64,000 nucleotides of DNA from IMGVR_UViG_3300017917_001996:186290-250289; one strand, 5' to 3'. Numbered from the stretch's first letter, positions 3 through 15,104 are shown. Notes: generated by a model from the sequence alone, not told the origin. Numbers and translations are program-made.

Positions 3-1145
3 TCGAATTTTACCGTTCCTACTGCACCACTAACAGCAATTGAAAATACAAGTTTGTTGACCTGCCAAAATACTACAATAGTAGATAACAGTACCAATAA
101 TTATACTATTACAAAAACAGGTTCTCCGTCTGTAAGTAGTCTAAGTCCTTTTGCAGTAGAGCCCGGTACGGTTCAATTGACAACCAATGGACGAACTCTT
201 GATTTCCCTATCACTTTCGGTGAATTAACTAACGGATCAGGTGTAGTAAAATTAGATGGTGCGTTAACATTAGGAAGTACCAGATCTGTTACTCATACTA
301 TTGGTACCTTAGATTTAAATGATTTTACTTTAACTGCATTAACGTATGTTTCTAATATTGGCAACAACAGATCTATTAATTTTAGATCAACGGGTCTAAT
401 TGTGTTGTCTGGTAGCGCCGCAACAGTATGGGACACATCTACAGGTACAGGTTTCTCCTGGTCGGGTAACTTTCAAGTTAATTCAACATACGCCGGATCC
501 ACTGGAACTAGAACATTTAACTTTGGAAATATCTCCGAAACATATGCACCTAATGTTAAGGTTAGCACAGGAGCAGGCGTGTTTAGTTTAGGTACTGCTG
601 CTGATGTAAAAGTAGTTACAGGATCTATAAATGACTTTGACCTAACTAGTTTTGCTGGTAACTTAAACAACAGCACAAGAACTATTTACGGTAATTTAAC
701 TATACCATCAACTGGGGGAAATATAATTGCTGGTACTTCGACAACCACATTTGGTTCAACTTCAGGTGTAGTTAAAACTGTTAACACCAATGCTAGAACA
801 ACGGATTTTCCGTATACCTTTGACGGAGTTGGTGGTAACTGGCAGCTGACAAATAATTTAGTAACTAGCGCAAGTCGTATAGTAACACTAACCAATGGTA
901 CTGTTGATTTTAATCAGAAATCAGTAACCGCTGCTAACATTAGAGTATTAACTGGAAATGCTGCACTAACCAATTTATCAACGACATTAAATATTGTACA
1001 CACCAGTGGAAATTTAACAATCAATTCAGGAACCATCAATAGCGCAACAACTGGTACATATACATTAACAGCAGGTAATTTAATTTTGAGCGGACCTTTA
1101 AGCACTGGAGCATTTACCAATAACGGTGGGGGAATTTTGTTATGA
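3..1145 (+). CDS. Thr/Gly-rich repetitive virion fibre protein, 5'-truncated
   Basis: Frame open from base 3 (SNFTVPTAPLTAIENTSLLTCQ, the end of a LamG-type module); TTNGRTLDFP repeats shared with the next ORF. Confidence 0.75.
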   Translation, partial: SNFTVPTAPLTAIENTSLLTCQNTTIVDNSTNNYTITKTGSPSVSSLSPFAVEPGTVQLTTNGRTLDFPITFGELTNGSGVVKLDGALTLGSTRSVTHTIGTLDLNDFTLTALTYVSNIGNNRSINFRSTGLIVLSGSAATVWDTSTGTGFSWSGNFQVNSTYAGSTGTRTFNFGNISETYAPNVKVSTGAGVFSLGTAADVKVVTGSINDFDLTSFAGNLNNSTRTIYGNLTIPSTGGNIIAGTSTTTFGSTSGVVKTVNTNARTTDFPYTFDGVGGNWQLTNNLVTSASRIVTLTNGTVDFNQKSVTAANIRVLTGNAALTNLSTTLNIVHTSGNLTINSGTINSATTGTYTLTAGNLILSGPLSTGAFTNNGGGILL

Positions 1146-4100
1146 GTGACTTAACAGTTACTTCTTTTGTATCAACAGGAACCACTGCACGTAGCATTGA
1201 TTTTAGTACTGGCAATATAATAGTGGCCAACAATGCAGGTGGTACATTAATTAATATGACTGCCACTGGTTTAACCGCTACCGGAGAGAGCACCGGCAAT
1301 GGATTTATCGTTCAAAACAATAGCGCGAATGCTACAACATTAACCTTTGGGGCATTTACAGAACCCAACGCAATGAACTTGTCTATTGACCGTGGTACAT
1401 ATGCATTAACCCTAGCATCCAGTGGCGCATATAGAAACTTAAATTTTACTGGATTTGCAGGTTCTCTAACTAACGTAGCAAGTTCTATATATGGAAACTT
1501 GATATTGTCTACTGGAATGACTCTAGTAGCTGGTACCGCTGCTTGGACACTAGCTGCAACAACAGACAATTGGACTGTCACCACAAATGGCAAAACTCTT
1601 GATTTCCCTCTTACCTTCGGTACTGCTACTAGTGCATTGGCTACCTGGATCTTACAAGATGCACTTACACTAGGAACAACCAGACTTTTAACTCTTACCG
1701 GCGGTAATTTAAATATCAATGACAAAACTGTTACAACTGGGTTGTTTGCTAGCAACAATTCAAATACAAGAAATATTAATTTTGGCAATGGTAAAATAGT
1801 CCTTAACGCTAGCACAGCCGTAACAGTTTGGACTACAGCAACGACCACAGGTTTAACTGTTTCTGGAGTTCCTTTGGTCGAATCCAGAGGTGGTGGTACA
1901 GCTATAACAAAAACTATTACACCTGGATCATTAAACGAAGCTAACGCTATTAATTTTAGCTTGCTTGAAACAACTGGCTCGGTTACGTATGTTATCACAG
2001 CCGGTGCAGTCAAGAACTTAACAATAAATGGTGCACAGACCCTTAGTAATACCGCGTTGAGTATTTACGGTCACATTATTCATGGCACAGGTAATGGCAC
2101 CACTACTTTTGCTACTGGTACCAACGCATGGACACTGGCTAATACAGGTACAACTACTGGTAATAATTACGGTGCATTTTTCCCATCGGGCGGGTATTTA
2201 ACTGTACCAGCTAATTCAAATTATGTATTCGATGGTGATTTTACTATAGAAGGTTGGATGTACTTTACAAATGTGGGCTTCGTTGACCCGCAAAGTTTAT
2301 TTTGTATAGGAAACGTTAGTGCTGGGTTTGATGTTCGTTGGTTTAATAGTCGTTGGCAAATTAGTTTTAATGCTGGCGCCGGTACTGACATGGGAGGCAC
2401 TGCTACAAATAATACATGGATTCACGTGGCTGCTGTTAGAAGTGGGTCATCGGTTAAGTTATACATAAATGGCGTAGCCACAGGCACTACTATTACTAAT
2501 AGTTCAACGTTGGGATATAGTAATGTAGCTCTCGGTATTGGCGCAGGCGGGGTGACTGCAGGAAACCCATTGCAAAACGGATATATTTCTAACTTAAGAA
2601 TAGTAAAAGGAATTGCAGTTTATACTAATAATTTTACTCCTCCTAGCGGTCCGCTTACTGCTACACAGAGTGCCGGAACCAATATTGCAGCAATACCAGG
2701 AACGGAGACTGTTCTTTTAACTTGCCAGAGCAGCACGTTTGTTGATAATTCGTCTTACGGAGTCACTCCTACTCAGGTATCTAATGCAGCAGTTTCTGCT
2801 TTAAGTCCTTTTACACTTTACTCAACCAGCACCAAAGCTGTAGGTCTTCGAGCAACTGTGGATTTCCCAATTACCGTAAACGGCGTTGGCGGAGAATGGG
2901 AATTAGATAATAACTTAACATTGGGTGCAACAAGGGTATTCACTTTAACCAATGGTACTTTTGACTTTAATAATAGAACAATAACTGCCAGCGGCATAAC
3001 TGTCTTAACAGGATCAGCAACTGCTCGAAATCTAATAACTACTCTAGCAGTTACACATACCAGCGGTAGTTTGACTTTGGGTTCAAACATCAGTACCGGA
3101 GCTTATACATTAACTGCCGGTAATCTGTTCTTGGGCACAAATACACTAACAATGCTATCGTTTGCTAGCAACAATTCAAATATAAGAAATATAGATTTTG
3201 CCACAGGCAAGATAGTCCTCAGTAACAGTGCAACAGCAACAATTTGGACTACAGCAACTGTTACAAATTTAACAACTTCAGGATCTCGATTAATCGAATC
3301 TACTGGCGGAGGAACCAGCGTTTTAAAAACAATTAATCCTGGATCATTAAGTGAAGCTAATGCTCTTAATTTTAGTTTATTGAACGTTGGCGGTACAGTA
3401 ACATATTCATTTAATTCTGGTTCAGTGAATAATTTATTAATTAACGGACAACAAACATTTGATAACACAGCTACATTGACTATATACGGTAACTATACAC
3501 ATAGCATCTCTAACGGAACTACAACATTTACTGCTAGACCAAGTGCGTGGGTATTTGCGAGTACAACGGGAATCAAAACAATAACTACCGCGTCTGCAAC
3601 ACACGAATTTCCTTGGACATTCAATGGTGTTGGTGGCACATGGTTATTGCAATCCTCGGTTACGCTTGGTATCAATGGTACACTAACTTTGACTAACGGA
3701 AATGTAGACTTAAACGGATATACACTAACCAGCGGTTTGTTTGCAACAGCAGCCGGAACTAAGTCGTTAATATTCAATGGCGGAACACTGGCAATTACAG
3801 GCTCTGGTGCTACCACATTTAATAATGCAAATACCTCGCAGCTAATCCTTGATAAAGGTAGTAGTGTTGGTACAATTAGTCTGACTAGCGCCATCGCCAA
3901 AACATTTATAGGCGGCAACTTTGATTATTCAGGTGTTATTTTAAATCAAGGTGGCACAGGAACACTAACTGTAGCCGGATCAAACACCTTCGAAGATTTG
4001 TCGGCTACTATTAGCACTACTGCAAACTCTACAATAACTTTTAGTTCAGGAACAACTACTACATGGAAAAAGTTTACACTCAATGGTACAGCCACATACC

Positions 4101-5266
4101 AACCAACTGTGGCTTCGGATACAGTTGATAGCCCGGCTACTTTCTACAAAGAACCAGAACCAAGTGGATTTATTACAGGTATTAACTACATTCGAGCACA
4201 GGATATAACTTTTACTCCTTTCGCAACAGATGGCACAGACTTTATACGCTGGCATATAGGAGCAAATTCTGTTATTGTCAGTAGTACTGGTGCCCTAGCG
4301 CAAACTTACCTTGCTGGTTCTACGCCTAAAGTCTATGTTATTGAAACAGGATCATCCTGGAAAGTGCCGAATGATTTTAATACTACTAATAATAGTATAC
4401 ACTTATTCGGAGGCGGTGGTGGCGGCGGCTCGAGTGTTAGCGCAATAACAGCCCGAATTGGTAGAAGCGCAGGAGCCGGCGGCGGGGGCGGCTATACTCG
4501 AGTAACTAACTTTAATCCAAAGAATTTAATTTCTGTAGATTATACAGTTGGTGCAGGCGGGCAAGGATCGACAATTTATTCATCGCCTGGGGGTAACGGT
4601 GGTTCTACAGTATTTTCAACATTTAGCGCAGGTGGCGGATCAGGCGGTGCTGCAATGGCAACTTCGTTAAGCGGAGGAGCAGGTGGTACAGGATCCACAG
4701 CAAACGGCGGTGCAGGCGGTAACGGTACTGATGGTGGTTTAAGTACATATACCGGCGGCGGAGGCGGTGGCGGAGCAGGCGGCGTGTATGGCAACGGCGC
4801 TAGCGGAGCTATTGGTGGATCCACTAATAGTGATTCAGTTGCAGGCGGTGGTGGTGGCGGTGGCGCAGCCAGCGGCGGTACTGCAGGATCCGCTGGATCG
4901 GGTGTTAGCGGCGGTAGCGGTGGTAACAACTCTTTTGGCATCGGCGGAAGCGTTTTCTCAACAACTGTTTTTTCACGAGCTTTTGCTGGTGGCGGTGGCG
5001 CTGGTTCTTATGGTGGCGTGTACCTTGGCGCATCACCTAGACCTGCAACAGCAGGCGGTCATGGAACTGATATTTTAAATTCTGTTGGTGCTGGCGGCGG
5101 CGGTGGCGGCCAAAACCAACGAGCTGCTGGTGGAACAGGCGGAAAATACGGCGGCGGCGGCGCAGGCGGTGCCCGATCGGGGTCTTCTGGTCTTAATGGT
5201 GCTACTGGCGGCATTATCATTCAATATCTACCAGTTACACCAAAATTCCTAGGCTGGTTCAATTAA
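1142..5266 (+). CDS. Large virion fibre/adhesin protein with beta-repeats, a LamG/concanavalin-like domain and a Gly-rich C-terminus
   Basis: DFTIEGW...WIHVAAVR...GYISNLRIVKG LamG motif; GGGGG-rich tail; ATGA overlap with upstream ORF. Confidence 0.75.
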   Translation: MSDLTVTSFVSTGTTARSIDFSTGNIIVANNAGGTLINMTATGLTATGESTGNGFIVQNNSANATTLTFGAFTEPNAMNLSIDRGTYALTLASSGAYRNLNFTGFAGSLTNVASSIYGNLILSTGMTLVAGTAAWTLAATTDNWTVTTNGKTLDFPLTFGTATSALATWILQDALTLGTTRLLTLTGGNLNINDKTVTTGLFASNNSNTRNINFGNGKIVLNASTAVTVWTTATTTGLTVSGVPLVESRGGGTAITKTITPGSLNEANAINFSLLETTGSVTYVITAGAVKNLTINGAQTLSNTALSIYGHIIHGTGNGTTTFATGTNAWTLANTGTTTGNNYGAFFPSGGYLTVPANSNYVFDGDFTIEGWMYFTNVGFVDPQSLFCIGNVSAGFDVRWFNSRWQISFNAGAGTDMGGTATNNTWIHVAAVRSGSSVKLYINGVATGTTITNSSTLGYSNVALGIGAGGVTAGNPLQNGYISNLRIVKGIAVYTNNFTPPSGPLTATQSAGTNIAAIPGTETVLLTCQSSTFVDNSSYGVTPTQVSNAAVSALSPFTLYSTSTKAVGLRATVDFPITVNGVGGEWELDNNLTLGATRVFTLTNGTFDFNNRTITASGITVLTGSATARNLITTLAVTHTSGSLTLGSNISTGAYTLTAGNLFLGTNTLTMLSFASNNSNIRNIDFATGKIVLSNSATATIWTTATVTNLTTSGSRLIESTGGGTSVLKTINPGSLSEANALNFSLLNVGGTVTYSFNSGSVNNLLINGQQTFDNTATLTIYGNYTHSISNGTTTFTARPSAWVFASTTGIKTITTASATHEFPWTFNGVGGTWLLQSSVTLGINGTLTLTNGNVDLNGYTLTSGLFATAAGTKSLIFNGGTLAITGSGATTFNNANTSQLILDKGSSVGTISLTSAIAKTFIGGNFDYSGVILNQGGTGTLTVAGSNTFEDLSATISTTANSTITFSSGTTTTWKKFTLNGTATYQPTVASDTVDSPATFYKEPEPSGFITGINYIRAQDITFTPFATDGTDFIRWHIGANSVIVSSTGALAQTYLAGSTPKVYVIETGSSWKVPNDFNTTNNSIHLFGGGGGGGSSVSAITARIGRSAGAGGGGGYTRVTNFNPKNLISVDYTVGAGGQGSTIYSSPGGNGGSTVFSTFSAGGGSGGAAMATSLSGGAGGTGSTANGGAGGNGTDGGLSTYTGGGGGGGAGGVYGNGASGAIGGSTNSDSVAGGGGGGGAASGGTAGSAGSGVSGGSGGNNSFGIGGSVFSTTVFSRAFAGGGGAGSYGGVYLGASPRPATAGGHGTDILNSVGAGGGGGGQNQRAAGGTGGKYGGGGAGGARSGSSGLNGATGGIIIQYLPVTPKFLGWFN

Positions 5267-5269
5267 TTT

Positions 5270-5298
5270 TTGACAAAACTAAAACTAGGCTATATAAT
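5270..5298 (+). promoter_or_regulatory. Sigma70-type promoter, leaderless to ATG 5304
   Basis: TTGACA-17 nt-TATAAT, ATG 5 nt downstream, no SD. Confidence 0.8.
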
Positions 5299-5303
5299 AG
5301 CGT

Positions 5304-8300
5304 ATGAAAATTGCTATTATAGATATAATTGGGCTTCCGTATGATGGTACAACGGTACACAATCAAGGACTAGGCGGAAGTGAAAGCGCAGTAACATTCA
5401 TGGCCGAGCAGCTGGCTCGGTTGAATTTTGATGTAACTGTTTTTAATAACTGCAACATTGATCACGCCCGTCCTGGGGTATATTCGGGTGTACTGTATAG
5501 ACCACTTGAAGATCTAACTCAAGATCACGAGTTTGATATTGTTATTAGCAGCCGAACTATAATTCCATTTGTTGACCCACACAGGTATCACGAACTTAAC
5601 GACAATCGTGCATTTGCACTGCAACACTATAATCTCTATGACCGTGTAGTCTCCCGAGCACAAATGAGAATTCTTTGGATGCATGACACCTTTTGTCTAG
5701 GTGATAACATGATCGAAGAGTTGGCTGTCAGCAATCGGATTACCGATATCTTTACACTAAGTGACTTTCATCTAACCTATGTGGCTAACTGCCATCACGG
5801 ACGCCGCAGAAATTTTGAAGTACTTAAACCAAAGTTGTTTATTACTAGAAACGGTGCTAACTGTTATCACAAAGAAATCGATCTAAAGAAAAAAGACCCA
5901 AATCTCTTTGTCTATAATGCCAGTGTGACCAAAGGAATGATACCCTTGGTTAATGAAGTTTGGCCAAGATTAAAAGCACAAATACCCGAAGCTCGGTTAA
6001 AGGTAATCGGTGGTTATTACAGATTTAGCGAAAGCTCGGGACCCGATCAGCAAGAACAAGATTGGCGACGAATGGTTGCTGATTCAAGGTATGCTGAGTT
6101 GGATATTGAGTTCACCGGAGTTATTCCACAAAAAGCAATCGGTGACATCTTAGCAGAATCTAATTTTATGATATACCCAACGGCGTTTCCTGAAACGTTT
6201 GGAATATCAACATTAGAATCATTACTTTACAATACTCCAGCAATTACTTGTAGATTCGGTGCTCTTGAAGAAATTGCAGTCGAAGGTGCTTGTTACCTAA
6301 TAGACTATGCCGTTGAACCTAACAGTTTATTTCCTGATATCAATCGAGTTGAGCAAGTACAAAAATTTGTAGACCTGGCTGTACGTGCTTATCGTGATCC
6401 ATATCTACATCAACAAAAACAACAATACTGTAACGTGGTCAAAGACATCGCTGGTTGGGATAGTGTAGCTCTACAGTGGAAGCAGCATTTCTATAAGAAA
6501 GCTGGAGAGTATTTGTCGCGAGACGAATATCGTGCTGTGAGCAAAATCAATCACAAAGTGCACAAAATTTGGAATCGTCGATACACTAACCCTATAGAGT
6601 TTGAACACTACAAGCCGGGTAATGAACAACCCATTGTGGTTGTGAGTACATTCTATAACTGTGCCAACTACATTGCACGTTGCATCAAAAGTGTAGCCTC
6701 TCAAGATTACGATAATTACAGTGTCTACCTGGTTAATGATGCCAGCACAGACAACACGCTAGAAGTAATCAACCAAACATTATCCACATTGCCTGTGGAT
6801 ATTAGATCAAAGTTTAAAACAATCAATCGTGATACAAATGTTGGTGCAGTAAAAAATCAAGTTGAAGTATTTAGAAGTATTCGAGATCCTGAATCAATTG
6901 TTATGATTCTAGATGGCGACGACAGTTTAATAAACAACAATTCCATTTTTAGCTACTACAATTCTATCTATGATGGAACAACAGAGTTTACCTATGGTAG
7001 CTGTTGGAGTATGGTTGACCGCATACCTTTGATCAGCCAACCTTATCCAGAACACATCAAACAGTCTCGAGCATATAGAGAGCATAGGTTTAATTGGAAT
7101 ATGCCTTACACGCATCTTCGCACATTTAAACAATATTTGATTAACAATATTAACAATTCGGTATTCAAGGATCAAGATGGTAATTGGTTCCGTGCTGGCG
7201 GCGATGGTGCTACTTTTTATAACTTAATTGAAGCAGCTGATCCAGATAAGGTTAAATGCTTACAGGAAGTTGTCTATAACTACAACGACACTAATCCACT
7301 GAATGATTACAAGATAAATGGTCACGAACAAAATAAAACTGCCGATGCTATTCTAAATCAAAAGAAAACAGAAAGCAAATTGTATTCGGTGATTGTTCCT
7401 ACAATGTGGAAGACTGCTAAAACATTTGCAGGCTTTGCCAAATCTTTGTGTGCACACCCGTTAGTGGGCGAATTAATCATTATTAATAATCAAAGTGAGT
7501 TGACCCCTGAAGGACTCAACAATCCTAAAATTAGAATGATCGATCCGGGCAGAAATATCTATGTTAATCCTGCCTGGAACCTAGGAGTAAAAACAAGCAG
7601 ATACGATCGTTTGTGTATTGTCAATGACGATGTTATATTTGATCTGACTGTACTAGAACGATTAAAAGATAGGCTAACACCCGAATCAGGAGTATTTGGA
7701 CTTTGTCCTGGTGTAGCCGATTTTAACCAACCTCCGGTTATTAACGGTAATATCGATATTATTCCATGGTCTGGCCAACACACCTACGGCTTTGGTTGCT
7801 TGATGTTTATACACAAAAAGTCTTGGCGAGAGATTCCTGCAGGATTAGAAATTTACTATGGCGACAACTTTATCTTTGACTTGCAGCTACATGAAAAGAA
7901 AACTAACTATCTAATAACCAACATGTTGTTCAAGTCCCAGTTTGCAGCCACGACATCAGACAAATCTATTACTGCTGGATTCTTAGAAAAAGAAACACCG
8001 ATTTACGAACAAATAAAAAGCCAAGGATTTACAACTAAAAAACAAGAGATAGCACCTGCTATAAACAAAACCGCAATGCCTAAAAAAAGAATTTTAATTG
8101 CTATCCCTACTGCACGTAACATAGAAGCAGAAACATTTAAAAGCATATATGATTTAGAAATACCCGAAGGGTATACTGCCACGTTCCAATACTTCTATGG
8201 TTACAACGTTGATCAAGTTAGAAATCTGATTGCTGATTGGGTAGTTAGAGGATTTGATTATTTGTTTAGTGTAGACAGTGATATTGCATTTCCGCCAGAC

Positions 8301-9362
8301 ACTTTGAAGAAGTTATTAGCACACGATAAAGACATGGTTTCTGGTTTGTATATTCAGCGCAAGCCCGGGCAGCATATCTTAGAAGTCTATGAGCATAATG
8401 GTCGAGGTGGTTCGAGTAACATACCCTATGAGAAAATTGTTGGACGAGGATTAGTAGAAATTGCCGGCTGCGGCTTTGGTTGTGTGCTAGTTAAAGCCGA
8501 AGTAATGCGAGCCATTCCTTACCCGCATTTTGTTTATCATAGTGCAATCGACCATAAAGACACTATCAGCGAAGATGTTGATTTTTGCCGTAAAGTGTTA
8601 GCTAAAAACTTTAAGATCTGGGCTGACACAACAGTGCAGTGCCGACATATTGGTTCAGCCGAGTTTGTTATTAACAACAACATTAAGCCAGTATCTGCCG
8701 AATCGAGACTTAGAGAATTACACAGTCAACGACTATTGCCACAAGCACATGTTGAATACTTGCAAAGACTAGCAGCATTGGGATTAAATCCTCCTGTGAT
8801 ATATGATCTCGGTGCTTGTGTGTTACATTGGACCAACGAAGCTCGTAGAATATGGCCCAATGCAAAGTACTATGCATTCGAAGCCATGAGCAGTTGCGAG
8901 TTCTTATACAAAGAAGATGGTATCGAGTACGCTATGGGTTTGCTCAGCGATGTCGATGGCAAAGAATTAGACTTTTATCAAAATGAAGAACATCCCGGCG
9001 GTAACAGTTATTATCGAGAAAACTCAGAGGTGAATCCGCAGGCTCCTATGTATTTTAATGAATCTCATCGACGTCGTTTAATTAGTCGTAGTCTAGACAG
9101 CCTGGTAAAAGAAAAAGGTTTTGCTATGCCTGCCTTATTAAAAATGGACATACAAGGTGCTGAACTAGATGTACTACGCGGCTCTACACAGGTACTTCAG
9201 TCCGTGACTGATGTTATCTTAGAGTTGCAAGTTGTTGAATACAATAAAGGTGCACCACTTCGAGATACCGTATTAGCATATATGGACAGTATCGGTTTTG
9301 ACTGTATAGGTATGTTCTGTAATAACGGTCCAGACGGGGACTATCATTTCAGAAAAAGATGA
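5304..9362 (+). CDS. Multidomain glycosyltransferase (GT4 + 3x GT2-like) fused to an FkbM-type methyltransferase
   Basis: GGSE...ETFGISTLE (GT-B); VNDASTD/LDGDD, IVNDD, VDSD (GT-A DxD); YDLGAC...LKMDIQGAELDVL (FkbM). Confidence 0.85.
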   Translation: MKIAIIDIIGLPYDGTTVHNQGLGGSESAVTFMAEQLARLNFDVTVFNNCNIDHARPGVYSGVLYRPLEDLTQDHEFDIVISSRTIIPFVDPHRYHELNDNRAFALQHYNLYDRVVSRAQMRILWMHDTFCLGDNMIEELAVSNRITDIFTLSDFHLTYVANCHHGRRRNFEVLKPKLFITRNGANCYHKEIDLKKKDPNLFVYNASVTKGMIPLVNEVWPRLKAQIPEARLKVIGGYYRFSESSGPDQQEQDWRRMVADSRYAELDIEFTGVIPQKAIGDILAESNFMIYPTAFPETFGISTLESLLYNTPAITCRFGALEEIAVEGACYLIDYAVEPNSLFPDINRVEQVQKFVDLAVRAYRDPYLHQQKQQYCNVVKDIAGWDSVALQWKQHFYKKAGEYLSRDEYRAVSKINHKVHKIWNRRYTNPIEFEHYKPGNEQPIVVVSTFYNCANYIARCIKSVASQDYDNYSVYLVNDASTDNTLEVINQTLSTLPVDIRSKFKTINRDTNVGAVKNQVEVFRSIRDPESIVMILDGDDSLINNNSIFSYYNSIYDGTTEFTYGSCWSMVDRIPLISQPYPEHIKQSRAYREHRFNWNMPYTHLRTFKQYLINNINNSVFKDQDGNWFRAGGDGATFYNLIEAADPDKVKCLQEVVYNYNDTNPLNDYKINGHEQNKTADAILNQKKTESKLYSVIVPTMWKTAKTFAGFAKSLCAHPLVGELIIINNQSELTPEGLNNPKIRMIDPGRNIYVNPAWNLGVKTSRYDRLCIVNDDVIFDLTVLERLKDRLTPESGVFGLCPGVADFNQPPVINGNIDIIPWSGQHTYGFGCLMFIHKKSWREIPAGLEIYYGDNFIFDLQLHEKKTNYLITNMLFKSQFAATTSDKSITAGFLEKETPIYEQIKSQGFTTKKQEIAPAINKTAMPKKRILIAIPTARNIEAETFKSIYDLEIPEGYTATFQYFYGYNVDQVRNLIADWVVRGFDYLFSVDSDIAFPPDTLKKLLAHDKDMVSGLYIQRKPGQHILEVYEHNGRGGSSNIPYEKIVGRGLVEIAGCGFGCVLVKAEVMRAIPYPHFVYHSAIDHKDTISEDVDFCRKVLAKNFKIWADTTVQCRHIGSAEFVINNNIKPVSAESRLRELHSQRLLPQAHVEYLQRLAALGLNPPVIYDLGACVLHWTNEARRIWPNAKYYAFEAMSSCEFLYKEDGIEYAMGLLSDVDGKELDFYQNEEHPGGNSYYRENSEVNPQAPMYFNESHRRRLISRSLDSLVKEKGFAMPALLKMDIQGAELDVLRGSTQVLQSVTDVILELQVVEYNKGAPLRDTVLAYMDSIGFDCIGMFCNNGPDGDYHFRKR

Positions 9363-9364
9363 AA

Positions 9365-9390
9365 CTAAATATCTAATACTAGATATTTAG
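9365..9390 (+). promoter_or_regulatory. Perfect 11-bp hairpin containing a late promoter TAAATA
   Basis: CTAAATATCTA-ATAC-TAGATATTTAG, ending 4 nt before ATG 9395. Confidence 0.65.
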
Positions 9391-9394
9391 AAAT

Positions 9395-10324
9395 ATGACA
9401 TTTGACCTAGGCGTTATACAAAGACAACAAAAACGTATTCCCTACGGTGAAGCGGTGTTTACAACTCCAGGTACATTTACCTGGACTGCACCCTTTTATG
9501 TTGATAGAGTTTGTGTAGTCTGCATTGGCGGCGGCGGTGGGGGCCAAGCTAGAAAAGATTCAACTCCAAATCATCTTCGTGGTGGTGCAGGCGGCGGTCT
9601 CGGCTGGCGCAATCAAATTCCGGTAGTACCAGGACAAACCTATACTGTAGTAGTTGGTGGCGGTGCACCGGGCGGCGCAACTTCCGCTGCTATGACAGAT
9701 AATGTTTACCCAACTAGCAATGGTGGAGATAGTTATTTTATTGATACTAACACTGTAAAAGGTGGCGGTGGCGCCAGTGCATCACCAGACGTATTTTATG
9801 CTCCAGGCGGCGACTACATTGGTGACGGCGGTGGCCTTGGTGGCGCAGGCGCCGGAGGTTTTGGGTTTTCTGGTTTAGGAAGCACAGGTGGCGGTGGCGG
9901 CGCTGGTGGCTATCTCGGTGCAGGCGGAAATGCCGGAGGCTCTTTACAAGGGATGGATCCACAGCCAGGTCAAGGAGGTGCAGGAGGCGGCGGCGGTTCT
10001 CTCGATGATGGAGTAAATCCTAATCACGGCACAGGCGCCGGCGGCGGCGGTACTGGTATATATGGCATAGGTGAAAGCGGTATAGCAGGCACAAATTCGG
10101 CTACTACGCCTACCGGTGGTTTAGGTGGTAGCAACGGCACCAATGGTATACGGCATAGCACTGTGTTTGTCGGCGGACGTGGAGGCGGACAGTACGGCGG
10201 CGGCGGTGCAGCCACTGGTTTTGATCCTATACCAATGGTAATTAAAGGTGCCGATGGCGGTTCGGGTGCAGTTAGAATAATATGGGGAACCAGCCGAAAC
10301 TTCCCTGATGCCAATGTTGGTTAA
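9395..10324 (+). CDS. Glycine-rich virion protein
   Basis: FTTPGTFTWTAP...VCIGGGGGG...GAVRIIW, a common phage Gly-rich domain. Confidence 0.7.
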   Translation: MTFDLGVIQRQQKRIPYGEAVFTTPGTFTWTAPFYVDRVCVVCIGGGGGGQARKDSTPNHLRGGAGGGLGWRNQIPVVPGQTYTVVVGGGAPGGATSAAMTDNVYPTSNGGDSYFIDTNTVKGGGGASASPDVFYAPGGDYIGDGGGLGGAGAGGFGFSGLGSTGGGGGAGGYLGAGGNAGGSLQGMDPQPGQGGAGGGGGSLDDGVNPNHGTGAGGGGTGIYGIGESGIAGTNSATTPTGGLGGSNGTNGIRHSTVFVGGRGGGQYGGGGAATGFDPIPMVIKGADGGSGAVRIIWGTSRNFPDANVG

Positions 10325-10331: not shown

Positions 10332-10360
10332 TTGATCTTTTGATTGGCATTTGCTATAGT
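10332..10360 (+). promoter_or_regulatory. Sigma70-type promoter, leaderless to ATG 10368
   Basis: TTGATC-17-TATAGT with extended TG; ATG 7 nt downstream. Confidence 0.65.
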
Positions 10361-10367
10361 AGCAAAT

Positions 10368-10769
10368 ATGAAAAAAGTGTTTGTTAACGGCTCCTTTGAT
10401 TTATTACATCCTGGGCACATTAAGTTATTAAATACTGCTCGTAGTCTAGGTGACTATCTAATGGTAGCCATAGACTCTGATCGACGAATAGCCGAAAAGA
10501 AAGGTCCAGACCGTCCTGTTAACAATCAATTTACTAGATACGTTTTGATGAGCAACATCAAAGCAGTTGATCAAGTTGTTGTTTTTGACAGCGACAGTGA
10601 ATTAGAAGATATTATTAAAAATTTTCAACCAGACATTATGATGGTAGGCAGCGACTGGCGAGGACGTACAGTAATTGGATCGCAGTATGCAGGCCATTTA
10701 GAGTTTTTCGAAAGACAAGATGATTATTCAACTACCAGTATACTCCAAAATTATATTAATCGGAGATAA
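10368..10769 (+). CDS. rfaE2: Heptose-1-phosphate nucleotidyltransferase (HldE/RfaE domain II-like)
   Basis: NGSFDLLHPGH HIGH motif, KKGPDRP, YSTT; start moved to MKKVFVNG. Confidence 0.85.
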   Translation: MKKVFVNGSFDLLHPGHIKLLNTARSLGDYLMVAIDSDRRIAEKKGPDRPVNNQFTRYVLMSNIKAVDQVVVFDSDSELEDIIKNFQPDIMMVGSDWRGRTVIGSQYAGHLEFFERQDDYSTTSILQNYINRR

Positions 10770-11478
10770 CTGCATCGATCAATACCAATACGGCACTGTA
10801 GATCGTATTAGCCCTGAAGCTCCTGTTCCGGTGTTTAAGCCTGAATCAGAAGAATCTCGCCCTGGTATGGCTGCAAATGTTCAAAAAAACCTTGAAGCAC
10901 TAGGACTAACAGTGGATGCATATTTAGGTCCGGCAAGCACTAAAACAAGATTGATAGATACCAGGAGTCAACAGCATATTGTTAGAATTGATAACGATGT
11001 ACTGGCAGACCCAATTGATATATCAGGAATTGATTTCAAACACGCTCAGGCTGTGGTAATATCTGATTACAACAAAGGTTCAGTTACATACGACATGGTT
11101 GAACAAATTGTAGACCAATTTAAAGGACCTATTTTTGTTGATTCTAAAAAACACGAATTGGCAAGATTCGATGGATGCATTGTTAAGATAAATGAAAATG
11201 AATACCGTTCTAGAAATAGTATCAATGACAACTTAATTGTTACATTAGGTGCATATGGTGCTATGTGGAAACAGTACAACAATGAAGAATTCTTTGATGC
11301 AGAAAATGTAGAGATAGCTGATGTATGTGGAGCAGGTGACACCTTCCTTGCAGCTCTAGTTTATCAATATCTGAAATCAAAAAATATACCTGATGCGATT
11401 CGATTTGCTATCCGTGCCAGCGCAGTTACAGTACAACATATAGGAGTATATGCTCCTAGACTAGAGGAAATTAAATGA
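10720..11478 (+). CDS. rfaE1: Heptose-7-phosphate kinase (HldE/RfaE domain I-like, PfkB family)
   Basis: RISPEAPVPV, ISDYNKG, DVCGAGDTF. Confidence 0.88.
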   Translation: MIIQLPVYSKIILIGDNCIDQYQYGTVDRISPEAPVPVFKPESEESRPGMAANVQKNLEALGLTVDAYLGPASTKTRLIDTRSQQHIVRIDNDVLADPIDISGIDFKHAQAVVISDYNKGSVTYDMVEQIVDQFKGPIFVDSKKHELARFDGCIVKINENEYRSRNSINDNLIVTLGAYGAMWKQYNNEEFFDAENVEIADVCGAGDTFLAALVYQYLKSKNIPDAIRFAIRASAVTVQHIGVYAPRLEEIK

Positions 11479-11834
11479 CAAGACTAATGGGTCGAGTAGA
11501 AAAAGGTTGGGGTTCTGAAGAAATTTGGGCCACTAACGACAAGTATTGTGGCAAGCTAATGCACTTCAACACAGGTGCAAAATTCAGTATGCACTTCCAT
11601 GCTACAAAGGATGAAACTTGGTATGTTCTCAGTGGGCAGTTTAGTGTATTCTATATTGATACTAAAGATGCTACTTTACACGAAGCACAATTAAGTACTG
11701 GTGACACTTGGCACAATGCTCCGTTATTACCTCACCAGTTAGTATGCGTAGAAGCAGGTACAATTATTGAAGTCAGTACTCCGGACTCAGTTGAGGATAA
11801 TTATAGAGTAGCAAAAGGTGATAGTCAAAAATGA
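11475..11834 (+). CDS. Cupin protein (sugar-phosphate isomerase-like)
   Basis: KGWGSEEIW...SMHFH...KDETWYV...PHQL cupin motifs. Confidence 0.75.
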   Translation: MTRLMGRVEKGWGSEEIWATNDKYCGKLMHFNTGAKFSMHFHATKDETWYVLSGQFSVFYIDTKDATLHEAQLSTGDTWHNAPLLPHQLVCVEAGTIIEVSTPDSVEDNYRVAKGDSQK

Positions 11835-12142
11835 AATATATTGTAGACATTGATGGTACTATCTGTACCAACACTAAAGGTGATTATCAAAGTGCAGAAC
11901 CTTTTATGGACAGGATTTCATACTTCAATAATCTGTTTGACCAAGGGCACGAAATACATTATTGGACTGCTCGTGGGGGCAATTCGGGTATCGATTGGAC
12001 CACACTAACACAACAGCAATTTGCCAATTGGCAGGTGAAATACACTACATTGAAGTTGGGTAAGCCTGTTTATGATGTATGGATTGATGACAAGGCTTTT
12101 AACGGTGACACCTACTTTGAGGATGTTAAGCGTTACAGTTAA
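11831..12142 (+). CDS. Small HAD-family phosphatase
   Basis: DIDGT, WTARG, GKP...IDDKA. Confidence 0.8.
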   Translation: MKYIVDIDGTICTNTKGDYQSAEPFMDRISYFNNLFDQGHEIHYWTARGGNSGIDWTTLTQQQFANWQVKYTTLKLGKPVYDVWIDDKAFNGDTYFEDVKRYS

Positions 12143-12548
12143 CTTCGGCTACTTTAATTTTAGCCATAATAGTTTCTGAGTTAAAAGTTCTATTAACGCC
12201 AGGGTGTGTAGGTTTCGGAATAGAGGTCAATGGCACCCAAGCATAACCTACGTGTTCATTGTTTAACACAGGAACAAACTCGTACTCAACAGCAATAAAA
12301 AACGTATGGTAAACAAACTGTTCGTTGTTGCTGGTAAACATCTCAATGGGTACCATTTTAGGTGCAATGATAGTACCACCTAGTTCTTCTAGGATTTCTC
12401 TTTCTAGTCCCTGTGAAACAGTTTCGCCAGGGTTTATCTTTCCGCCTGGTAAACCCCATGTTGCTGACCAACTTCCTGACCCTCGTAACAAGAAAAGATA
12501 ACGCTGAGTATCTTTAGCATAAATCAGTGCGCCAACACCTTCGGTCAA
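12126..12548 (-). CDS. NUDIX hydrolase
   Basis: Nudix box GGKINPGETVSQGLEREILEELG; probable TTG start at 12548 overlapping the upstream stop, with GGAG SD. Confidence 0.85.
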   Translation of the reverse strand: MTEGVGALIYAKDTQRYLFLLRGSGSWSATWGLPGGKINPGETVSQGLEREILEELGGTIIAPKMVPIEMFTSNNEQFVYHTFFIAVEYEFVPVLNNEHVGYAWVPLTSIPKPTHPGVNRTFNSETIMAKIKVAEVNCNA

Positions 12549-13927
12549 GGCACGAAACTCCACGCCCCTGCGCCGTAACGTCCTTCCACTGATTTGGTCC
12601 ATTGATTGTCTTTCCATTTGTATTGAGTATTAGTTCTAAGGTTGGTTACGTATTTTACATTAGTTGAGGCATTACTGTCAAAGGAAACAGTCCACTTAGC
12701 ACCATCAAATTCAATAATATCATTGGTTTGAGCAATTAACTCAGGTTGACCTGGCTTGTGCCAAACGGCTGCGCCTTCGTCGTTGGCTGCATTGCCAATG
12801 TCATTGAGTATCAAATACCTTGTTCCAGCAGCTGGTGTAAGTAAATCAGAATCTACTTTAACGTTTAAAGGATCAATGATTGCAGTGACAGGAGCAAGGT
12901 TATTAGCCGGAAGAGTGTCAATGATAGGTGTAAACAATAATAATGTAGCATCGCTTGGATGATATGCTACAGTACCGACTACAGTGGTTCCTGCTTGACT
13001 TAGTCTGATTTGACTGATGCCGTTGGTTAATGTTCCGTAATCTCTAATAATATCGACCCATTTTATATCATTAGTAGTAAATGAAGTAGCACCTGGTATA
13101 AAATCACTGGTGTAATCTGATGTAGAAATTTTCAATGTGTTGCCTATATACAGAACACCATAATTCGAAGGTGTGTAGATTCGTCTAGACAGTAACGTTG
13201 ATTGACTTAGATCAAATGTACCAGCAGCATGGTCGATGGTATTATTTGAATCCCATATGCTTTCAATGATACGCTGTATGACGCCCATCTTTTTAACTTT
13301 AGCAGGTGCACTAAACCAAATTGGAATATCAAATGTTAATGTGGCTATGTCAATGGCGTCTTCGGCACCCATTGGAATTGTGCGGCTAGTAAAGTTAGTA
13401 TCGGTTAATGTAACGTAGGTTAAGCTGGTCCAGTCTACATAGTTGTCTGTGCTTTGTATTTCTAAACTTGGATTGAACAAAACTGAAATTTGTTCTAGTA
13501 ACTGTAACTTTTGCTCAGTATTACTGGTCCAGATATCGCATTTTAACGTCAGCATATATGGAACAGGCATTAATCTTTCAACTGTAATTAAGTCTCCCTG
13601 TTCGCTTGTAAACTCGCCTGCTTCATTAATAGCACGTTCACGAAGATGTACCTTGCTGACATGGAATGGTTCTTGCATTCTTTTTTGGTCATAGCGTAAT
13701 GCACTAATGTACACACTCATAGCAGGCACAGTTGGTGTACTGTTTTCGCTATTGTTGCGTAGAATCATAGCTACCTGGCGGCTGCCGTCACCGTAATATA
13801 TAGGTACCTGAAGTAGTGTAGGATTTCCTTGGTCATTGTATCCAATGGCCACTTGGAAATTACTCATCATCCTTATAAACTGCTGTAAGAATCTTCTTAT
13901 CTGCCCTGAGTAAAAATATGAATTCAT
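12545..13927 (-). CDS. Tail sheath stabiliser/terminator (T4 gp15-like)
   Basis: YFYSGQIRR...VPIYYG...PVPY...QLLEQI..FNP pattern; next to neck genes. Confidence 0.7.
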   Translation of the reverse strand: MNSYFYSGQIRRFLQQFIRMMSNFQVAIGYNDQGNPTLLQVPIYYGDGSRQVAMILRNNSENSTPTVPAMSVYISALRYDQKRMQEPFHVSKVHLRERAINEAGEFTSEQGDLITVERLMPVPYMLTLKCDIWTSNTEQKLQLLEQISVLFNPSLEIQSTDNYVDWTSLTYVTLTDTNFTSRTIPMGAEDAIDIATLTFDIPIWFSAPAKVKKMGVIQRIIESIWDSNNTIDHAAGTFDLSQSTLLSRRIYTPSNYGVLYIGNTLKISTSDYTSDFIPGATSFTTNDIKWVDIIRDYGTLTNGISQIRLSQAGTTVVGTVAYHPSDATLLLFTPIIDTLPANNLAPVTAIIDPLNVKVDSDLLTPAAGTRYLILNDIGNAANDEGAAVWHKPGQPELIAQTNDIIEFDGAKWTVSFDSNASTNVKYVTNLRTNTQYKWKDNQWTKSVEGRYGAGAWSFVP

Positions 13928-15075: not shown

Positions 15076-15104
15076 TTGACAGGCTAACCGTTTTAGTGTA
15101 TAAT
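15076..15104 (+). promoter_or_regulatory. Sigma70-type promoter, leaderless to ATG 15112
   Basis: TTGACA-17-TATAAT, ATG 7 nt downstream. Confidence 0.8.

What the first reader, a model, noticed from the sequence alone, without database searches (positions are those of the whole stretch)
5304..9362. Glycan assembly line: four glycosyltransferase domains plus a methyltransferase in one 1352-aa protein
Seen: a GT4-like domain, three GT-A (DxD) domains and an FkbM domain in series, embedded among Thr/Ser/Gly-rich virion genes. Established: GT-methyltransferase fusions build and methyl-cap glycans, e.g. chlorovirus PBCV-1 A064R. Inference: the phage builds a defined, O-methyl-capped oligosaccharide on its own virion proteins, or on the host surface.
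Basis: partly seen in the sequence, partly recalled or inferred. Interest (0 to 1): 0.7.

Follow-up and report, generated by a model that had tools for sequence, protein, structure and literature searches.

The report
Five-module phage glycan-building enzyme
A large freshwater phage encodes one 1352-residue protein carrying four sugar-adding enzymes and a methyl-adding enzyme, beside genes that make an activated seven-carbon sugar; the enzyme looks fully active, but what it decorates (the phage's own tail fibres or the host surface) is still open.

Summary
ORF 5304-9362 (+) encodes 1352 aa with five modules: GT4-like GT-B (1-430), GT2 GT-A (431-692), a second GT-A (693-915), a third GT-A closest to STIV A197/Mnn9 (916-1135) and an FkbM methyltransferase (1136-1352). 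All five keep their catalytic signatures across more than 100 homologues, and both AlphaFold halves are confident.

The window is the end of a 250-kb pond-metagenome record of a T4-like jumbo myovirus. The gene sits at the right end of the tail-fibre module.

New findings:
- The family (over 1200 clusters) is modular. GTB-GTA1-GTA3 is constant; GTA2 and the methyltransferase are optional, duplicated or replaced.
- The gene has its own sigma-70-type promoter 5 nt before the ATG, conserved in relatives. ATAAATA late motifs mark other structural genes.
- An ADP-heptose cassette (HldC-like, HldA-like, cupin, HAD) lies downstream. In seven relatives' loci it directly follows the enzyme gene; in three of them (one gene order) it includes a clear HldD.
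- No route to hydroxylated DNA bases and no integrase were found.

The acceptor is unresolved: virion or fibre proteins about 0.4, host envelope glycan about 0.3. This is a new variant of a known kind and moderately interesting.

The parts
5270..5298 (+). Sigma-70-type promoter (TTGACA, 17 nt, TATAAT; 12 of 12) ending 5 nt before the ATG, with no Shine-Dalgarno sequence. This implies a leaderless or near-leaderless transcript.
   Evidence: Conserved in relatives: 41 of 59 distinct upstream sequences score at least 10/12 (20 are perfect), against 6 of 2000 random 60-mers. The spacer is only 36% identical between pairs.
5304..6593 (+). Module 1, residues 1-430: GT-B fold, GT4-like retaining glycosyltransferase, plus a helical linker (about 348-423) to module 2.
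   Evidence: PF00534 at 42.4 bits. VIA Z 25-29 to GT4 enzymes SPS, PimA, PglA, WaaG and BshA; Foldseek matches. E297-x7-E305, G24-G25 and K210 are invariant in 108 sequences.
6594..7379 (+). Module 2, residues 431-692: GT-A fold, GT2. It is held in a fixed orientation to module 1.
   Evidence: PF00535 at 64 bits. Z about 20 to K4CP, PmHS2, TarS and SpsA. D479, S481, D483 and D537-G-D-D540 are invariant. pTM 0.88 for residues 1-697.
7380..8048 (+). Module 3, residues 693-915: GT-A fold, GT2-like. This is an optional module, absent from the roughly 1120-aa relatives.
   Evidence: PF00535 at 22.4 bits, E 1.3e-4. Z 15-16 to DPMS, WrtF and GalNAc-T. N774-D-D776 is conserved in at least 90% of sequences. 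Presence and absence are mapped.
8049..8708 (+). Module 4, residues 916-1135: compact GT-A fold closest to the archaeal-virus GT A197 and yeast Mnn9. Constant in the family, with homologues in cyanomyoviruses.
   Evidence: phrog_1574 E 4.5e-22. VIA Z 21.2 to STIV A197 (rmsd 2.1, 22% identity) and Z 17.5 to Mnn9. D991-S-D993 and E1090-D1091 are invariant. tblastn matches to Synechococcus phages at 31-33% identity.
8709..9362 (+). Module 5, residues 1136-1352 plus stop: FkbM-family SAM-dependent methyltransferase. This is an optional module, missing or duplicated in some relatives.
   Evidence: PF05050 at 48.6 bits and TIGR01444 at 54.3 bits, both above cut-off. Class-I methyltransferase fold, Z 13-14. 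The YDLGA motif (1167-1171) and K-x-D-x-Q-G-A-E (1280-1287) are conserved in at least 90% of sequences.
1142..5266 (+). Upstream neighbour P0002 (1374 aa): T/S/G/N-rich fibre-like protein with a Laminin_G_3 domain and a C-terminal glycine-rich domain. It is a candidate acceptor and part of the receptor-binding module.
   Evidence: LamG-type large proteins lie upstream of the enzyme gene in most relatives.
3..1145 (+). C-terminal end of a 2673-aa fibre-like protein (30% S+T, the highest in the record). It starts outside the window at G000:179413.
9395..10324 (+). 309-aa Gly_rich_2 protein (31% Gly), the same family as two paralogues in the fibre module. PHROGs label a related family 'tail fiber assembly'.
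   Evidence: PF21722 E 2e-12; phrog_4474 and phrog_863. No match to any solved structure.
10332..10360 (+). Second sigma-70-like promoter (TTGATC, 17 nt, TATAGT, preceded by TG) ending 7 nt before the ATG at 10368.
10344..10769 (+). HldC / RfaE-domain-II-like heptose-1-phosphate adenylyltransferase. The likely start is the ATG at 10368. The HxGH motif is present.
   Evidence: TIGR02199 E 8e-35, but 119.8 bits is below the 181.5 equivalog cut-off. PF01467. PDB matches. Motif.
10720..11478 (+). HldA / RfaE-domain-I-like heptose-7-phosphate kinase (PfkB family). The GAGD motif is present.
   Evidence: TIGR02198 E 8e-41, but 140 bits is below the 345 cut-off. The best PDB match is D-beta-D-heptose 7-phosphate kinase 4e84 at E 1.3e-18, against 7e-9 for ribokinases.
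11475..11834 (+). 119-aa metal-binding cupin, weakly like mannose-6-phosphate isomerase and WbuC. It is present in every copy of the cassette and is a candidate sugar-phosphate isomerase.
   Evidence: It is 65-78% identical in relatives, the best-conserved cassette gene. No SIS-type GmhA is found in this record or in the complete relative.
11831..12142 (+). 103-aa HAD-type phosphatase with a DxDxT motif. It is a candidate for the GmhB step.
   Evidence: Weak matches: TIGR01689 E 2.4e-5 and PF25109 E 0.04. Motif. A homologue is present in L018.

Best explanation
P0001 is a soluble, cytoplasmic, five-module glycan assembly enzyme of a lytic T4-like jumbo phage. A GT4-like GT-B module and three GT-A modules each add one sugar, and the C-terminal FkbM module methylates the product. 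The result would be a short, defined, probably methyl-capped hetero-oligosaccharide. At least one sugar is probably heptose, drawn from the adjacent phage-encoded ADP-heptose pathway. The gene is transcribed from its own strong sigma-70-type promoter, so probably from early in infection. Swapping modules (GTA2, the methyltransferase, extra inserts, duplicated GT-B) changes the glycan between related phages. The most likely acceptor is the phage's own virion proteins, above all the Ser/Thr-rich fibre and adhesin proteins encoded next to it, which would be glycosylated in the cytoplasm before assembly. What is shown: the domain anatomy, catalytic motifs, modularity, promoter conservation and cassette identity. 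What is inferred: one sugar per module, the methyl cap, heptose use by this enzyme, and the acceptor.
For: Active modules: invariant EX7E, DxD, ED and SAM motifs in 64-108 homologues and confident folds. Cytoplasmic: no hydrophobic segment typical of a membrane span, the highest 19-residue hydropathy being 1.74 in a buried strand of module 4. Modularity: the core GTB-GTA1-GTA3 is constant, while GTA2 and the methyltransferase are optional and some relatives have duplicated GT-B or methyltransferase modules or roughly 190-aa inserts. Position: always at the edge of the fibre, adhesin or baseplate genes, including a 34%-identical homologue in a distant T4-like contig next to a TylF-like O-methyltransferase. 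Donor supply: the HldA-like, HldC-like, cupin and HAD cassette directly follows the gene in seven loci in two different gene orders. In L090-L092 the cassette includes an HldD homologue (E 4e-51 to E. coli ADP-heptose 6-epimerase). A GalE is also encoded in the record. Lytic lifestyle: no tyrosine integrase in the 100%-complete relative, so slow seroconversion of a lysogen is unlikely. Precedents: module 4 is structurally closest to STIV A197. From my own knowledge, STIV, the chloroviruses, Mimivirus and some mycobacteriophages glycosylate their virions with virus-encoded enzymes.
Against: No direct evidence shows that any virion protein is glycosylated. The gene has an early-type sigma-70 promoter, whereas many structural genes carry the late ATAAATA motif, so it is not simply co-expressed with the fibres. 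In most relatives its right-hand neighbours are typical early or auxiliary genes such as a non-specific endonuclease and an ADP-ribosyltransferase, so its place beside the fibres may be a module boundary rather than a functional link. ADP-heptose is best known as an LPS-core donor. A separate GT9-like heptosyltransferase at 42638-43525 could be the real user of the cassette. High S/T content is common in tail fibres generally. More distant relatives (G006, G007; 80% and 67% complete) show no copy of the enzyme.
Confidence: 0.4

Rival explanations
1. The enzyme remodels a host envelope glycoconjugate (LPS core, O-antigen or capsule precursor) on the cytoplasmic face of the inner membrane, starting early in infection. 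The modified surface would block superinfection or stop progeny from re-adsorbing to infected cells and debris. The gene sits next to the receptor-binding genes because receptor specificity and receptor modification are co-adapted.
For: It has an early-type sigma-70 promoter, conserved across relatives. The ADP-heptose and UDP-Gal supply genes provide the classic LPS-core donors. GT4 structural neighbours include WaaG, WaaB, PglA, WbnH and PimA, which act on lipid-linked acceptors. The published reading of cupin, PfkB, nucleotidyltransferase and GT clusters in jumbo cyanophages is host surface modification (PMC7824862, section 3.4.10). FkbM/RfbT-type methylation of O-antigen termini is a known serotype determinant (own knowledge; a stand-alone methyltransferase in L067 weakly matches the RfbT family).
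Against: The 250-kb record shows no candidate flippase, ABC exporter, ligase or initiating transferase by a hydropathy screen. The few multi-span proteins are unrelated, for example Bax1-I. No integrase was found, and a lytic cycle leaves little time to replace existing surface LPS (the argument about time is inference). The enzyme is present in all close relatives sampled rather than sporadically. No lytic-phage precedent with experimental support was found in the paper searches.
Confidence: 0.3
2. The enzyme acts on another acceptor. It might build a free or small-molecule-linked methylated oligosaccharide, such as a cytoplasmic polysaccharide, a signalling or decoy glycan, or a sink for host nucleotide sugars. 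It might also glycosylate non-virion phage or host proteins.
For: The closest GT-B structures include enzymes with soluble acceptors: sucrose-phosphate synthase, BshA, MshA, glycogen synthases and the methylmannose-polysaccharide mannosyltransferase. The gene is expressed early and independently of the fibres.
Against: There is no positive evidence for this reading. It does not explain the persistent placement next to fibre and baseplate genes across 34-80% identity.
Confidence: 0.12
3. The enzyme hypermodifies phage DNA by glycosylating hydroxymethylated or hydroxylated pyrimidines, as in T-even phages.
For: It has an early-type promoter, as T4 alpha-gt and beta-gt do (own knowledge). Phage DNA glycosyltransferases include GT-B enzymes; T4 alpha-GT appears at Z 21 among many GT-B matches.
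Against: No thymidylate-synthase-family gene (needed for 5hmC, 5hmU or 5hoC) and no TET/JBP dioxygenase were found in this record or in the 364,554-bp, 100%-complete relative. The TET search also found nothing in the control genomes, so that negative is weaker. All known routes start from such enzymes (PMC13326640 abstract). A four-GT plus methyltransferase chain and ADP-heptose have no precedent on DNA.
Confidence: 0.03
4. The protein is a degenerate relic with inactive modules.
For: Modules 3 and 4 score below Pfam cut-offs when scanned alone.
Against: Catalytic motifs are invariant or nearly so in every module. The family has more than 1200 clusters at 90% identity, with 59-72% mean pairwise identity per module and no internal stops.
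Confidence: 0.02

Closest known systems
Chlorovirus PBCV-1 A064R (two rhamnosyltransferase domains plus a methyltransferase; it builds part of the capsid-protein glycan). Characterised from the literature as I recall it.
   Same: It is a virus-encoded, soluble, multi-domain fusion of glycosyltransferases with a terminal methyltransferase. It works without host ER or Golgi or membrane machinery and produces a methylated terminal sugar.
   Different: No sequence or structural match to A064R turned up. Here there are five modules rather than three, including a GT-B module. The virus is a bacterial one and the acceptor is unknown.
Jumbo cyanophage 'LPS / cell-surface' gene clusters (P-SSM2 type; Iyer et al. 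2021, PMC7824862)
   Same: The same enzyme families occur together: cupin, PfkB kinase, HIGH-type nucleotidyltransferase, NAD epimerase and several GTs. Module 4 has 31-33% identical homologues in Synechococcus myoviruses.
   Different: In the cyanophages the genes are separate and lie in hypervariable islands. Here four GTs and a methyltransferase are fused into one polypeptide at the fibre-module edge, and the sugar pathway is identifiable as ADP-heptose. Function is untested in both cases.
Mycobacteriophage virion glycosylation (Freeman et al. 2023, cited in PMC12619734; the paper itself is not held)
   Same: Phage-encoded GTs near structural genes decorate virion proteins.
   Different: Those are single-domain GT genes in small siphoviruses of Actinobacteria. 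No homology was tested.
STIV A197 (archaeal-virus GT-A) and yeast Mnn9 (GT62)
   Same: They are the closest solved folds to module 4: Z 21.2 and 17.5, 20-22% identity, with a DxD motif.
   Different: A197 is a stand-alone 191-residue protein. The Pfam Anp1 score for module 4 is below cut-off, so GT62 membership is not shown.
Bacterial multi-domain glycan synthases with tandem GT domains (K4CP, PmHS2) or terminating methyltransferases (WbdA/WbdD, WsaE). The last three are from my own knowledge.
   Same: They have tandem GT modules in one chain, and K4CP and PmHS2 are top structural matches for the tandem GT-A region. Methylation acts as a chain terminator.
   Different: Those enzymes are polymerases that make repeats. 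Here each module type occurs once and modules are gained or lost, which suggests a fixed-length oligosaccharide.
ADP-heptose pathway (GmhA, HldE or HldA+HldC, GmhB, HldD)
   Same: The kinase and adenylyltransferase match RfaE domains I and II best, a HAD phosphatase is present, and HldD is present in relatives.
   Different: The scores are below the equivalog cut-offs and the genes are split and reordered. There is no SIS-type GmhA; a small cupin always present in the cassette may take its place. That substitution is inference.

Membership tests
CAZy GT4-type retaining GT-B (module 1) | Two-Rossmann GT-B fold | tested here: met
   VIA Z 25-29 over residues 1-403 to GT4 enzymes; Foldseek E about 1e-13.
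CAZy GT4-type retaining GT-B (module 1) | EX7E motif in the C-terminal half | tested here: met
   E297 and E305 are invariant in 108 sequences.
CAZy GT4-type retaining GT-B (module 1) | Pfam Glycos_transf_1 above the gathering score | tested here: met
   42.4 bits against a 26.4 cut-off.
CAZy GT4-type retaining GT-B (module 1) | Retaining transfer from an NDP-sugar | not testable with these tools
   This needs an enzyme assay and product NMR.
GT2 GT-A (modules 2 and 3) | Pfam Glycos_transf_2 above the gathering score | tested here: inconclusive
   Module 2 scores 64 bits against a 23.3 cut-off (met). Module 3 scores 22.4 bits, just below it.
GT2 GT-A (modules 2 and 3) | GT-A fold with a DxD metal and nucleotide motif | tested here: met
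   Module 2: D537-G-D-D540, Z about 20 to K4CP, TarS and SpsA. Module 3: N774-D-D776, Z 15-16 to DPMS and WrtF.
GT62 / Anp1-Mnn9 or A197-like GT-A (module 4) | Pfam Anp1 above the gathering score | tested here: not met
   17.2 bits against a 28.8 cut-off. Module 4 is therefore not filed as GT62.
GT62 / Anp1-Mnn9 or A197-like GT-A (module 4) | Fold and DxD shared with A197 and Mnn9 | tested here: met
   Z 21.2 and 17.5; D991-S-D993 is invariant.
FkbM methyltransferase (module 5) | PF05050 and TIGR01444 above their cut-offs | tested here: met
   48.6 bits against 22.7 and 54.3 bits against 37.7.
FkbM methyltransferase (module 5) | SAM-binding motif I and class-I fold | tested here: met
   The YDLGA motif (1167-1171) is conserved in at least 90% of sequences; Z 13-14 to class-I methyltransferases.
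FkbM methyltransferase (module 5) | O-methylation of a sugar hydroxyl | not testable with these tools
   Inferred from the family and context only.
ADP-heptose biosynthesis (cassette 10344-12142) | HldE-type kinase and adenylyltransferase at equivalog level | tested here: not met
   The best matches are RfaE domains I and II (E 8e-41 and 8e-35), but the scores of 140 and 119.8 bits are below the cut-offs of 345 and 181.5. The cassette resembles these enzymes but membership is not certified.
ADP-heptose biosynthesis (cassette 10344-12142) | SIS-type sedoheptulose-7-phosphate isomerase GmhA | tested here: not met
   No SIS_2 match in this record or in the complete relative.
ADP-heptose biosynthesis (cassette 10344-12142) | HldD epimerase linked to the cassette | tested here: inconclusive
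   HldD is absent next to the cassette in this window. It is present in the cassette of L090-L092, with E 4e-51 to PDB 1eq2.
Virion-glycosylation system | A glycan demonstrated on a virion protein | not testable with these tools
   This needs glycoproteomics of virions or co-expression with candidate acceptors.
DNA-glycosylating phage GT | A partner enzyme that makes a hydroxylated base (ThyA homologue or TET/5mYOX) | tested here: not met
   The TET model also found nothing in the control genomes, so that half of the test is weaker.

The most novel reading that the evidence does not exclude
This jumbo-phage lineage carries a programmable glycan assembly line. A constant GTB-GTA1-GTA3 chassis takes plug-in modules (an extra GT-A, methyltransferases, duplicated GT-B). 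It is co-transcribed with a self-sufficient ADP-heptose pathway in which a small cupin replaces GmhA. The system would place heptose-containing, methyl-capped O-glycans on the phage's own receptor-binding fibres. That would be the first heptosylated phage virion, and possibly a GT4-like domain using ADP-heptose.
Probability: 0.2. Interest if true: 0.8.

Novelty: new variant of a known kind. Interest (0 to 1): 0.55.

Why it matters
Virus-encoded glycosylation independent of host machinery is established for chloroviruses, Mimivirus and some mycobacteriophages. It is barely explored in phages of Gram-negative bacteria.

This family has several features that make it useful:
- It is abundant in freshwater viromes: over 1200 clusters at 90% identity, and 442 or more IMG/VR stretches confirmed by tblastn.
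- It packs four transferases and a methyltransferase into one soluble chain.
- It varies by module swapping, so sequence should be relatable to glycan structure directly.

If the fibres are the acceptor, phage glycans would become a new variable in host recognition, defence evasion and phage engineering. If the host envelope is the acceptor, this would be an experimentally tractable case for the long-standing but untested idea that lytic jumbo phages remodel host surfaces.

Two side-findings are each testable with simple complementation or reporter assays: a cupin in place of GmhA, and conserved leaderless sigma-70 promoters.

Tried and rejected
- **Nucleotide search of isolated phages:** a megablast of the gene against 50,697 phage records found nothing. 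tblastn found only single-module matches under 40% identity. No cultured relative exists to lean on.
- **A064R homology:** no A064R chain appeared in the sequence search of solved structures or among the fold-search rows listed. It remains an analogy only.
- **DNA modification:** rejected on the absence of ThyA-family and TET genes.
- **Temperate lifestyle and seroconversion:** no tyrosine integrase was found. Serine recombinases were not searched.
- **Late co-transcription with the fibres:** the gene has no ATAAATA motif and instead has its own sigma-70 promoter.
- **Link between cassette and module architecture:** the cassette occurs with 4-module and 5-module forms and is missing from near-identical relatives (L087-L089 against L090-L092). 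No module could be tied to heptose.
- **Host identification:** there are no tRNAs in the window. GalE found no close bacterial relative. The source is a pond metagenome.
- **AlphaFold DB cluster search:** many GT-B plus GT-A fusions exist, but none shares the inter-domain arrangement (TM at most 0.46).
- **The 'moraphage' lineage (PMC12619734):** it is described as up to 307 kb with Bacteroidota hosts. No evidence links it to this phage.
- **Solved-structure searches of other genes:** the Gly_rich_2 protein, the GT9-like ORF and the DUF5672 ORF gave nothing.
- **Complex prediction:** not run. An enzyme-substrate contact with an unknown site is a poor target for that test.

Full report
**Observation**

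The ORF at 5304-9362 (+) is real, uninterrupted and 1352 aa long. Pfam, PHROGs and NCBIfam find:
- a Glycos_transf_1 C-half at 191-342;
- three Glycos_transf_2-type stretches at about 446-604, 695-795 and 985-1070;
- an FkbM methyltransferase at 1170-1333.

I folded two halves on alignments of 108 and 64 homologues. Residues 1-697 gave pLDDT 89.3 and pTM 0.88. Residues 690-1352 gave pLDDT 92.0 and pTM 0.49. So modules 1 and 2 are predicted as one rigid unit joined by a helical linker, and modules 3 to 5 behave like beads on a string.

Structure searches assign the modules as follows:
- Module 1 is a GT4-type GT-B enzyme, with Z 25-29 to SPS, PimA, PglA, WaaG and BshA.
- Module 2 is GT2, with Z about 20 to K4CP, PmHS2, TarS and SpsA.
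- Module 3 is a generic GT2-like GT-A, with Z 15-16.
- Module 4 is closest to the archaeal-virus enzyme STIV A197 (Z 21.2, rmsd 2.1) and yeast Mnn9 (Z 17.5).
- Module 5 is a class-I methyltransferase.

Every module keeps its signature residues across the family:
- E297-x7-E305, with G24-G25 and K210;
- D479/D483 and D537-G-D-D540;
- N774-D-D776;
- D991-S-D993 and E1090-D1091;
- the YDLGA SAM motif and the KxDxQGAE motif.

**The genome**

The window is the last 64 kb of a 250,289-bp IMG/VR record that CheckV rates 71% complete. It comes from a pond metagenome.

It is a T4-like jumbo myovirus:
- a gp15-type tail sheath stabiliser at 12545-13927 (-);
- a sheath protein at 19678-23025;
- collagen-like fibres with GYTGS repeats;
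- a protein with six LamG repeats.

The gp15 homologue is 35-38% identical to those of Sinorhizobium phage Phosso and Atu_ph07, and 34-35% identical to PA5oct-type phages. Rak2-type phages match only its N-terminal half.

ATAAATA, the core of the T4 late promoter, occurs 47 times in the record. Of these, 29 lie in the 60 nt upstream of gene starts on the sense strand, against a shuffled mean of 6.5 and maximum of 18. They cluster in the structural region.

**Context**

Upstream of the enzyme gene lie a 2673-aa protein with 30% S+T and P0002, which has LamG and Gly_rich_2 domains. Further upstream are collagen-like fibres and two 309-319-aa Gly_rich_2 proteins. Downstream lies a third Gly_rich_2 protein (9395-10324).

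- an RfaE-domain-II / HldC-like adenylyltransferase (E 8e-35);
- an RfaE-domain-I / HldA-like heptose-7-phosphate kinase (E 8e-41), whose best PDB match is the Burkholderia heptose kinase at E 1e-18, against 7e-9 for ribokinases;
- a 119-aa metal-binding cupin;
- a 103-aa HAD phosphatase with DxDxT.

All scores are below NCBIfam's equivalog cut-offs, so I say these genes work like the ADP-heptose pathway, not that they are certified members.

The relatives add support. In seven loci (L014, L018, L019, L080, L090-L092) the cassette directly follows the enzyme gene, in two different gene orders. In L090-L092 it includes a clear HldD, with E 4e-51 to E. coli ADP-L-glycero-D-manno-heptose 6-epimerase and the next family at 1e-9.

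No SIS-type GmhA exists in this record or in the 364,554-bp, 100%-complete relative G001. The cupin is present in every cassette and is its best-conserved gene. It is therefore a candidate replacement isomerase, but this is inference.

**The family**

The 5.8-billion-protein search returned 1241 clusters at E <= 0.001 among the 8000 candidates scored. The profile-free scan of 1.84 billion representatives found 274 at E <= 1e-30.

Mapping the five modules onto homologues shows a constant GTB-GTA1-GTA3 chassis. Around it:
- GTA2 is present or absent (about 1350 aa against about 1120 aa);
- the methyltransferase is absent in some relatives, duplicated in others, or supplied by an extra stand-alone FkbM gene next door;
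- GT-B is duplicated in the 1800-aa forms;
- unassigned inserts of about 190 aa occur in the 1540-aa forms.

In other genomes GTB-GTA1 and GTA3-MT occur as separate proteins. Mean pairwise identity is 72% for GTB, 65% for GTA1, 62% for GTA2, 72% for GTA3 and 59% for the methyltransferase. This fits a fixed-length product whose outer part varies, rather than a polymerase.

**Expression**

A perfect TTGACA-17-TATAAT promoter sits at 5270-5298, 5 nt before the ATG, with no Shine-Dalgarno sequence. Only seven perfect sites exist in 250 kb, against 0.3 expected. Five are intergenic and lie 6-56 nt upstream of a gene start.

Among 59 distinct upstream sequences of homologues, 41 score at least 10/12 and 20 are perfect. 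Random 60-mers reach that score in 6 of 2000 cases. Twenty-five of the 41 carry the extended -10 TG. The hexamers are conserved while the spacer is only 36% identical, and the -10 element ends 5-11 nt before the ATG.

The start codon is secure. Residues 2-6 form the first strand of the Rossmann fold, and A4, I5 and D7 are invariant. The cassette has a similar promoter ending 7 nt before its ATG.

The enzyme and its donor genes are therefore most likely read by unmodified host polymerase from early in infection, on leaderless or nearly leaderless messages. This sets them apart from the late-motif structural genes.

**What it acts on**

DNA is unlikely. No ThyA-family hydroxymethylase or hydroxylase and no TET enzyme occur in this record or in the complete relative. 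Every known route to glycosylated DNA begins with one of these.

Seroconversion of a lysogen is unlikely, because no integrase was found.

Two readings remain.

For virion or fibre glycosylation:
- The gene keeps its place at the edge of the fibre, adhesin or baseplate genes across 34-80% identity. This includes a distant contig that reads only with TAG as Gln, where the GTB-GTA1 core sits beside a TylF-like O-methyltransferase and upstream of large ORFs and a T4 baseplate gene.
- The enzyme is soluble, with no membrane partner encoded nearby.
- It was found in all the close relatives sampled and is absent from the more distant relatives G006 and G007.
- Other viruses provide precedents.

For host-envelope remodelling:
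- The promoter is of the early type.
- ADP-heptose and UDP-Gal are LPS-core donors (GalE).
- GT4 structural neighbours include enzymes that act on lipid-linked acceptors.
- The gene's right-hand neighbours in most relatives are early or auxiliary genes, namely a non-specific endonuclease and an ADP-ribosyltransferase.
- The published interpretation of similar cyanophage clusters is host surface modification.

A further complication is a second cluster in this window at 40436-44661. It holds a 2OG oxygenase, a methyltransferase, a DUF5672 protein, a GT9-like heptosyltransferase and a GT4-like enzyme. It could be the real consumer of ADP-heptose.

I put virion proteins at about 0.4, host envelope at about 0.3, other acceptors at about 0.12 and DNA at about 0.03.

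**Comparison and novelty**

The closest functional analogue is PBCV-1 A064R, but no homology to it was detected. The closest genomic analogue is the cyanophage cupin, PfkB, nucleotidyltransferase and GT clusters described by Iyer et al. (PMC7824862). Full-text searches found no paper on this fusion family or on phage-encoded ADP-heptose operons.

I rate it a new variant of a known kind. The interest lies in four things:
- five catalytic modules in one phage protein;
- the visible module swapping;
- the co-transcribed ADP-heptose pathway with a possible cupin isomerase;
- the conserved leaderless early promoter.

Noticed in passing
window 40436-44661: There is a second sugar or modification operon with overlapping stops and starts: a 2OG-Fe(II) oxygenase (40436-41197), a class-I SAM methyltransferase (41194-41814), a DUF5672 protein (41811-42641), a GT9-like heptosyltransferase (42638-43525) and a GT1/GT4-like enzyme (43522-44661). 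It lies next to a UvsX-like RecA gene (35707-36771). The GT9 plus GT1 pair is also present in relative G005. It may be the real user of ADP-heptose.
   Followed up: partly
window 15076-15104, 15375-15403, 44865-44893 (and G000:28774-28802): There are further perfect TTGACA-17-TATAAT promoters. Two of them end only 6-8 nt before an ATG with no Shine-Dalgarno sequence. This suggests that the phage uses leaderless early messages as a regular device.
   Followed up: partly
whole record G000; in the window e.g. upstream of the genes starting at 18252, 19678, 23162, 23853, 26804, 29005 and 30741: ATAAATA, the T4 late-promoter core, is about 20-fold enriched in the 60 nt upstream of gene starts: 29 of the 47 genome-wide occurrences lie there. 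They are mostly before structural genes.
   Followed up: yes
window 11475-11834: The small cupin is present in every copy of the heptose cassette and is its best-conserved gene, while no SIS-type GmhA is found even in the complete relative. It may be a non-orthologous sedoheptulose-7-phosphate isomerase.
   Followed up: partly
G000:C1:58587-63549 (outside the window; loci L012, L174): A GalE UDP-glucose 4-epimerase (E 3e-58 to solved GalEs) lies beside a 403-aa ORF with a weak GT-B-like match, GTP cyclohydrolase I, an HNH endonuclease and a five-span Bax1-I family membrane protein.
   Followed up: partly
G000:C1:40784-41659 (locus L002 1159-2034): A 291-aa ORF has 25% identity to module 4 (residues 985-1130) of the enzyme and no Pfam match. 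It is probably another stand-alone A197-like GT-A.
   Followed up: no
L003 76-2385 and 10197-12866 (G000:166375-168684 and 176496-179165): The collagen-like tail fibres are built of GYTGS-type triplets, with Thr in the Y position in 26 of 87 and 53 of 151 triplets. Thr-rich collagen repeats are O-glycosylated in Bacillus BclA (own knowledge), so these are further candidate acceptors.
   Followed up: no
L175 (Logan contig, 30,304 bp): A 34%-identical GTB-GTA1 homologue translates to the database protein only if TAG is read as Gln. The contig belongs to a T4-like phage (UvsX-like and T4_baseplate genes). A TylF-like O-methyltransferase lies just upstream.
   Followed up: no
L006 643-2892 and L007 553-2802: In a relative, a 749-aa protein with an Mtd_N domain (major tropism determinant, the target of diversity-generating retroelements) lies in the fibre module a few genes upstream of the enzyme gene.
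   Followed up: no
window 9367-9388: There is an AT-rich perfect hairpin (9-bp stem, 4-nt loop) in the 32-nt gap between the enzyme's stop codon and the next gene. It could be a processing or attenuation site.
   Followed up: no
L030 4808-5641 and 5744-6433; L057 11508-12212; L067 14059-14757: The genes to the right of the enzyme gene vary between relatives. A non-specific DNA/RNA endonuclease is the most common (22 copies among the loci examined). Others are an ADP-ribosyltransferase-like protein, a fatty-acid-desaturase-like membrane protein, and extra stand-alone FkbM methyltransferases.
   Followed up: partly
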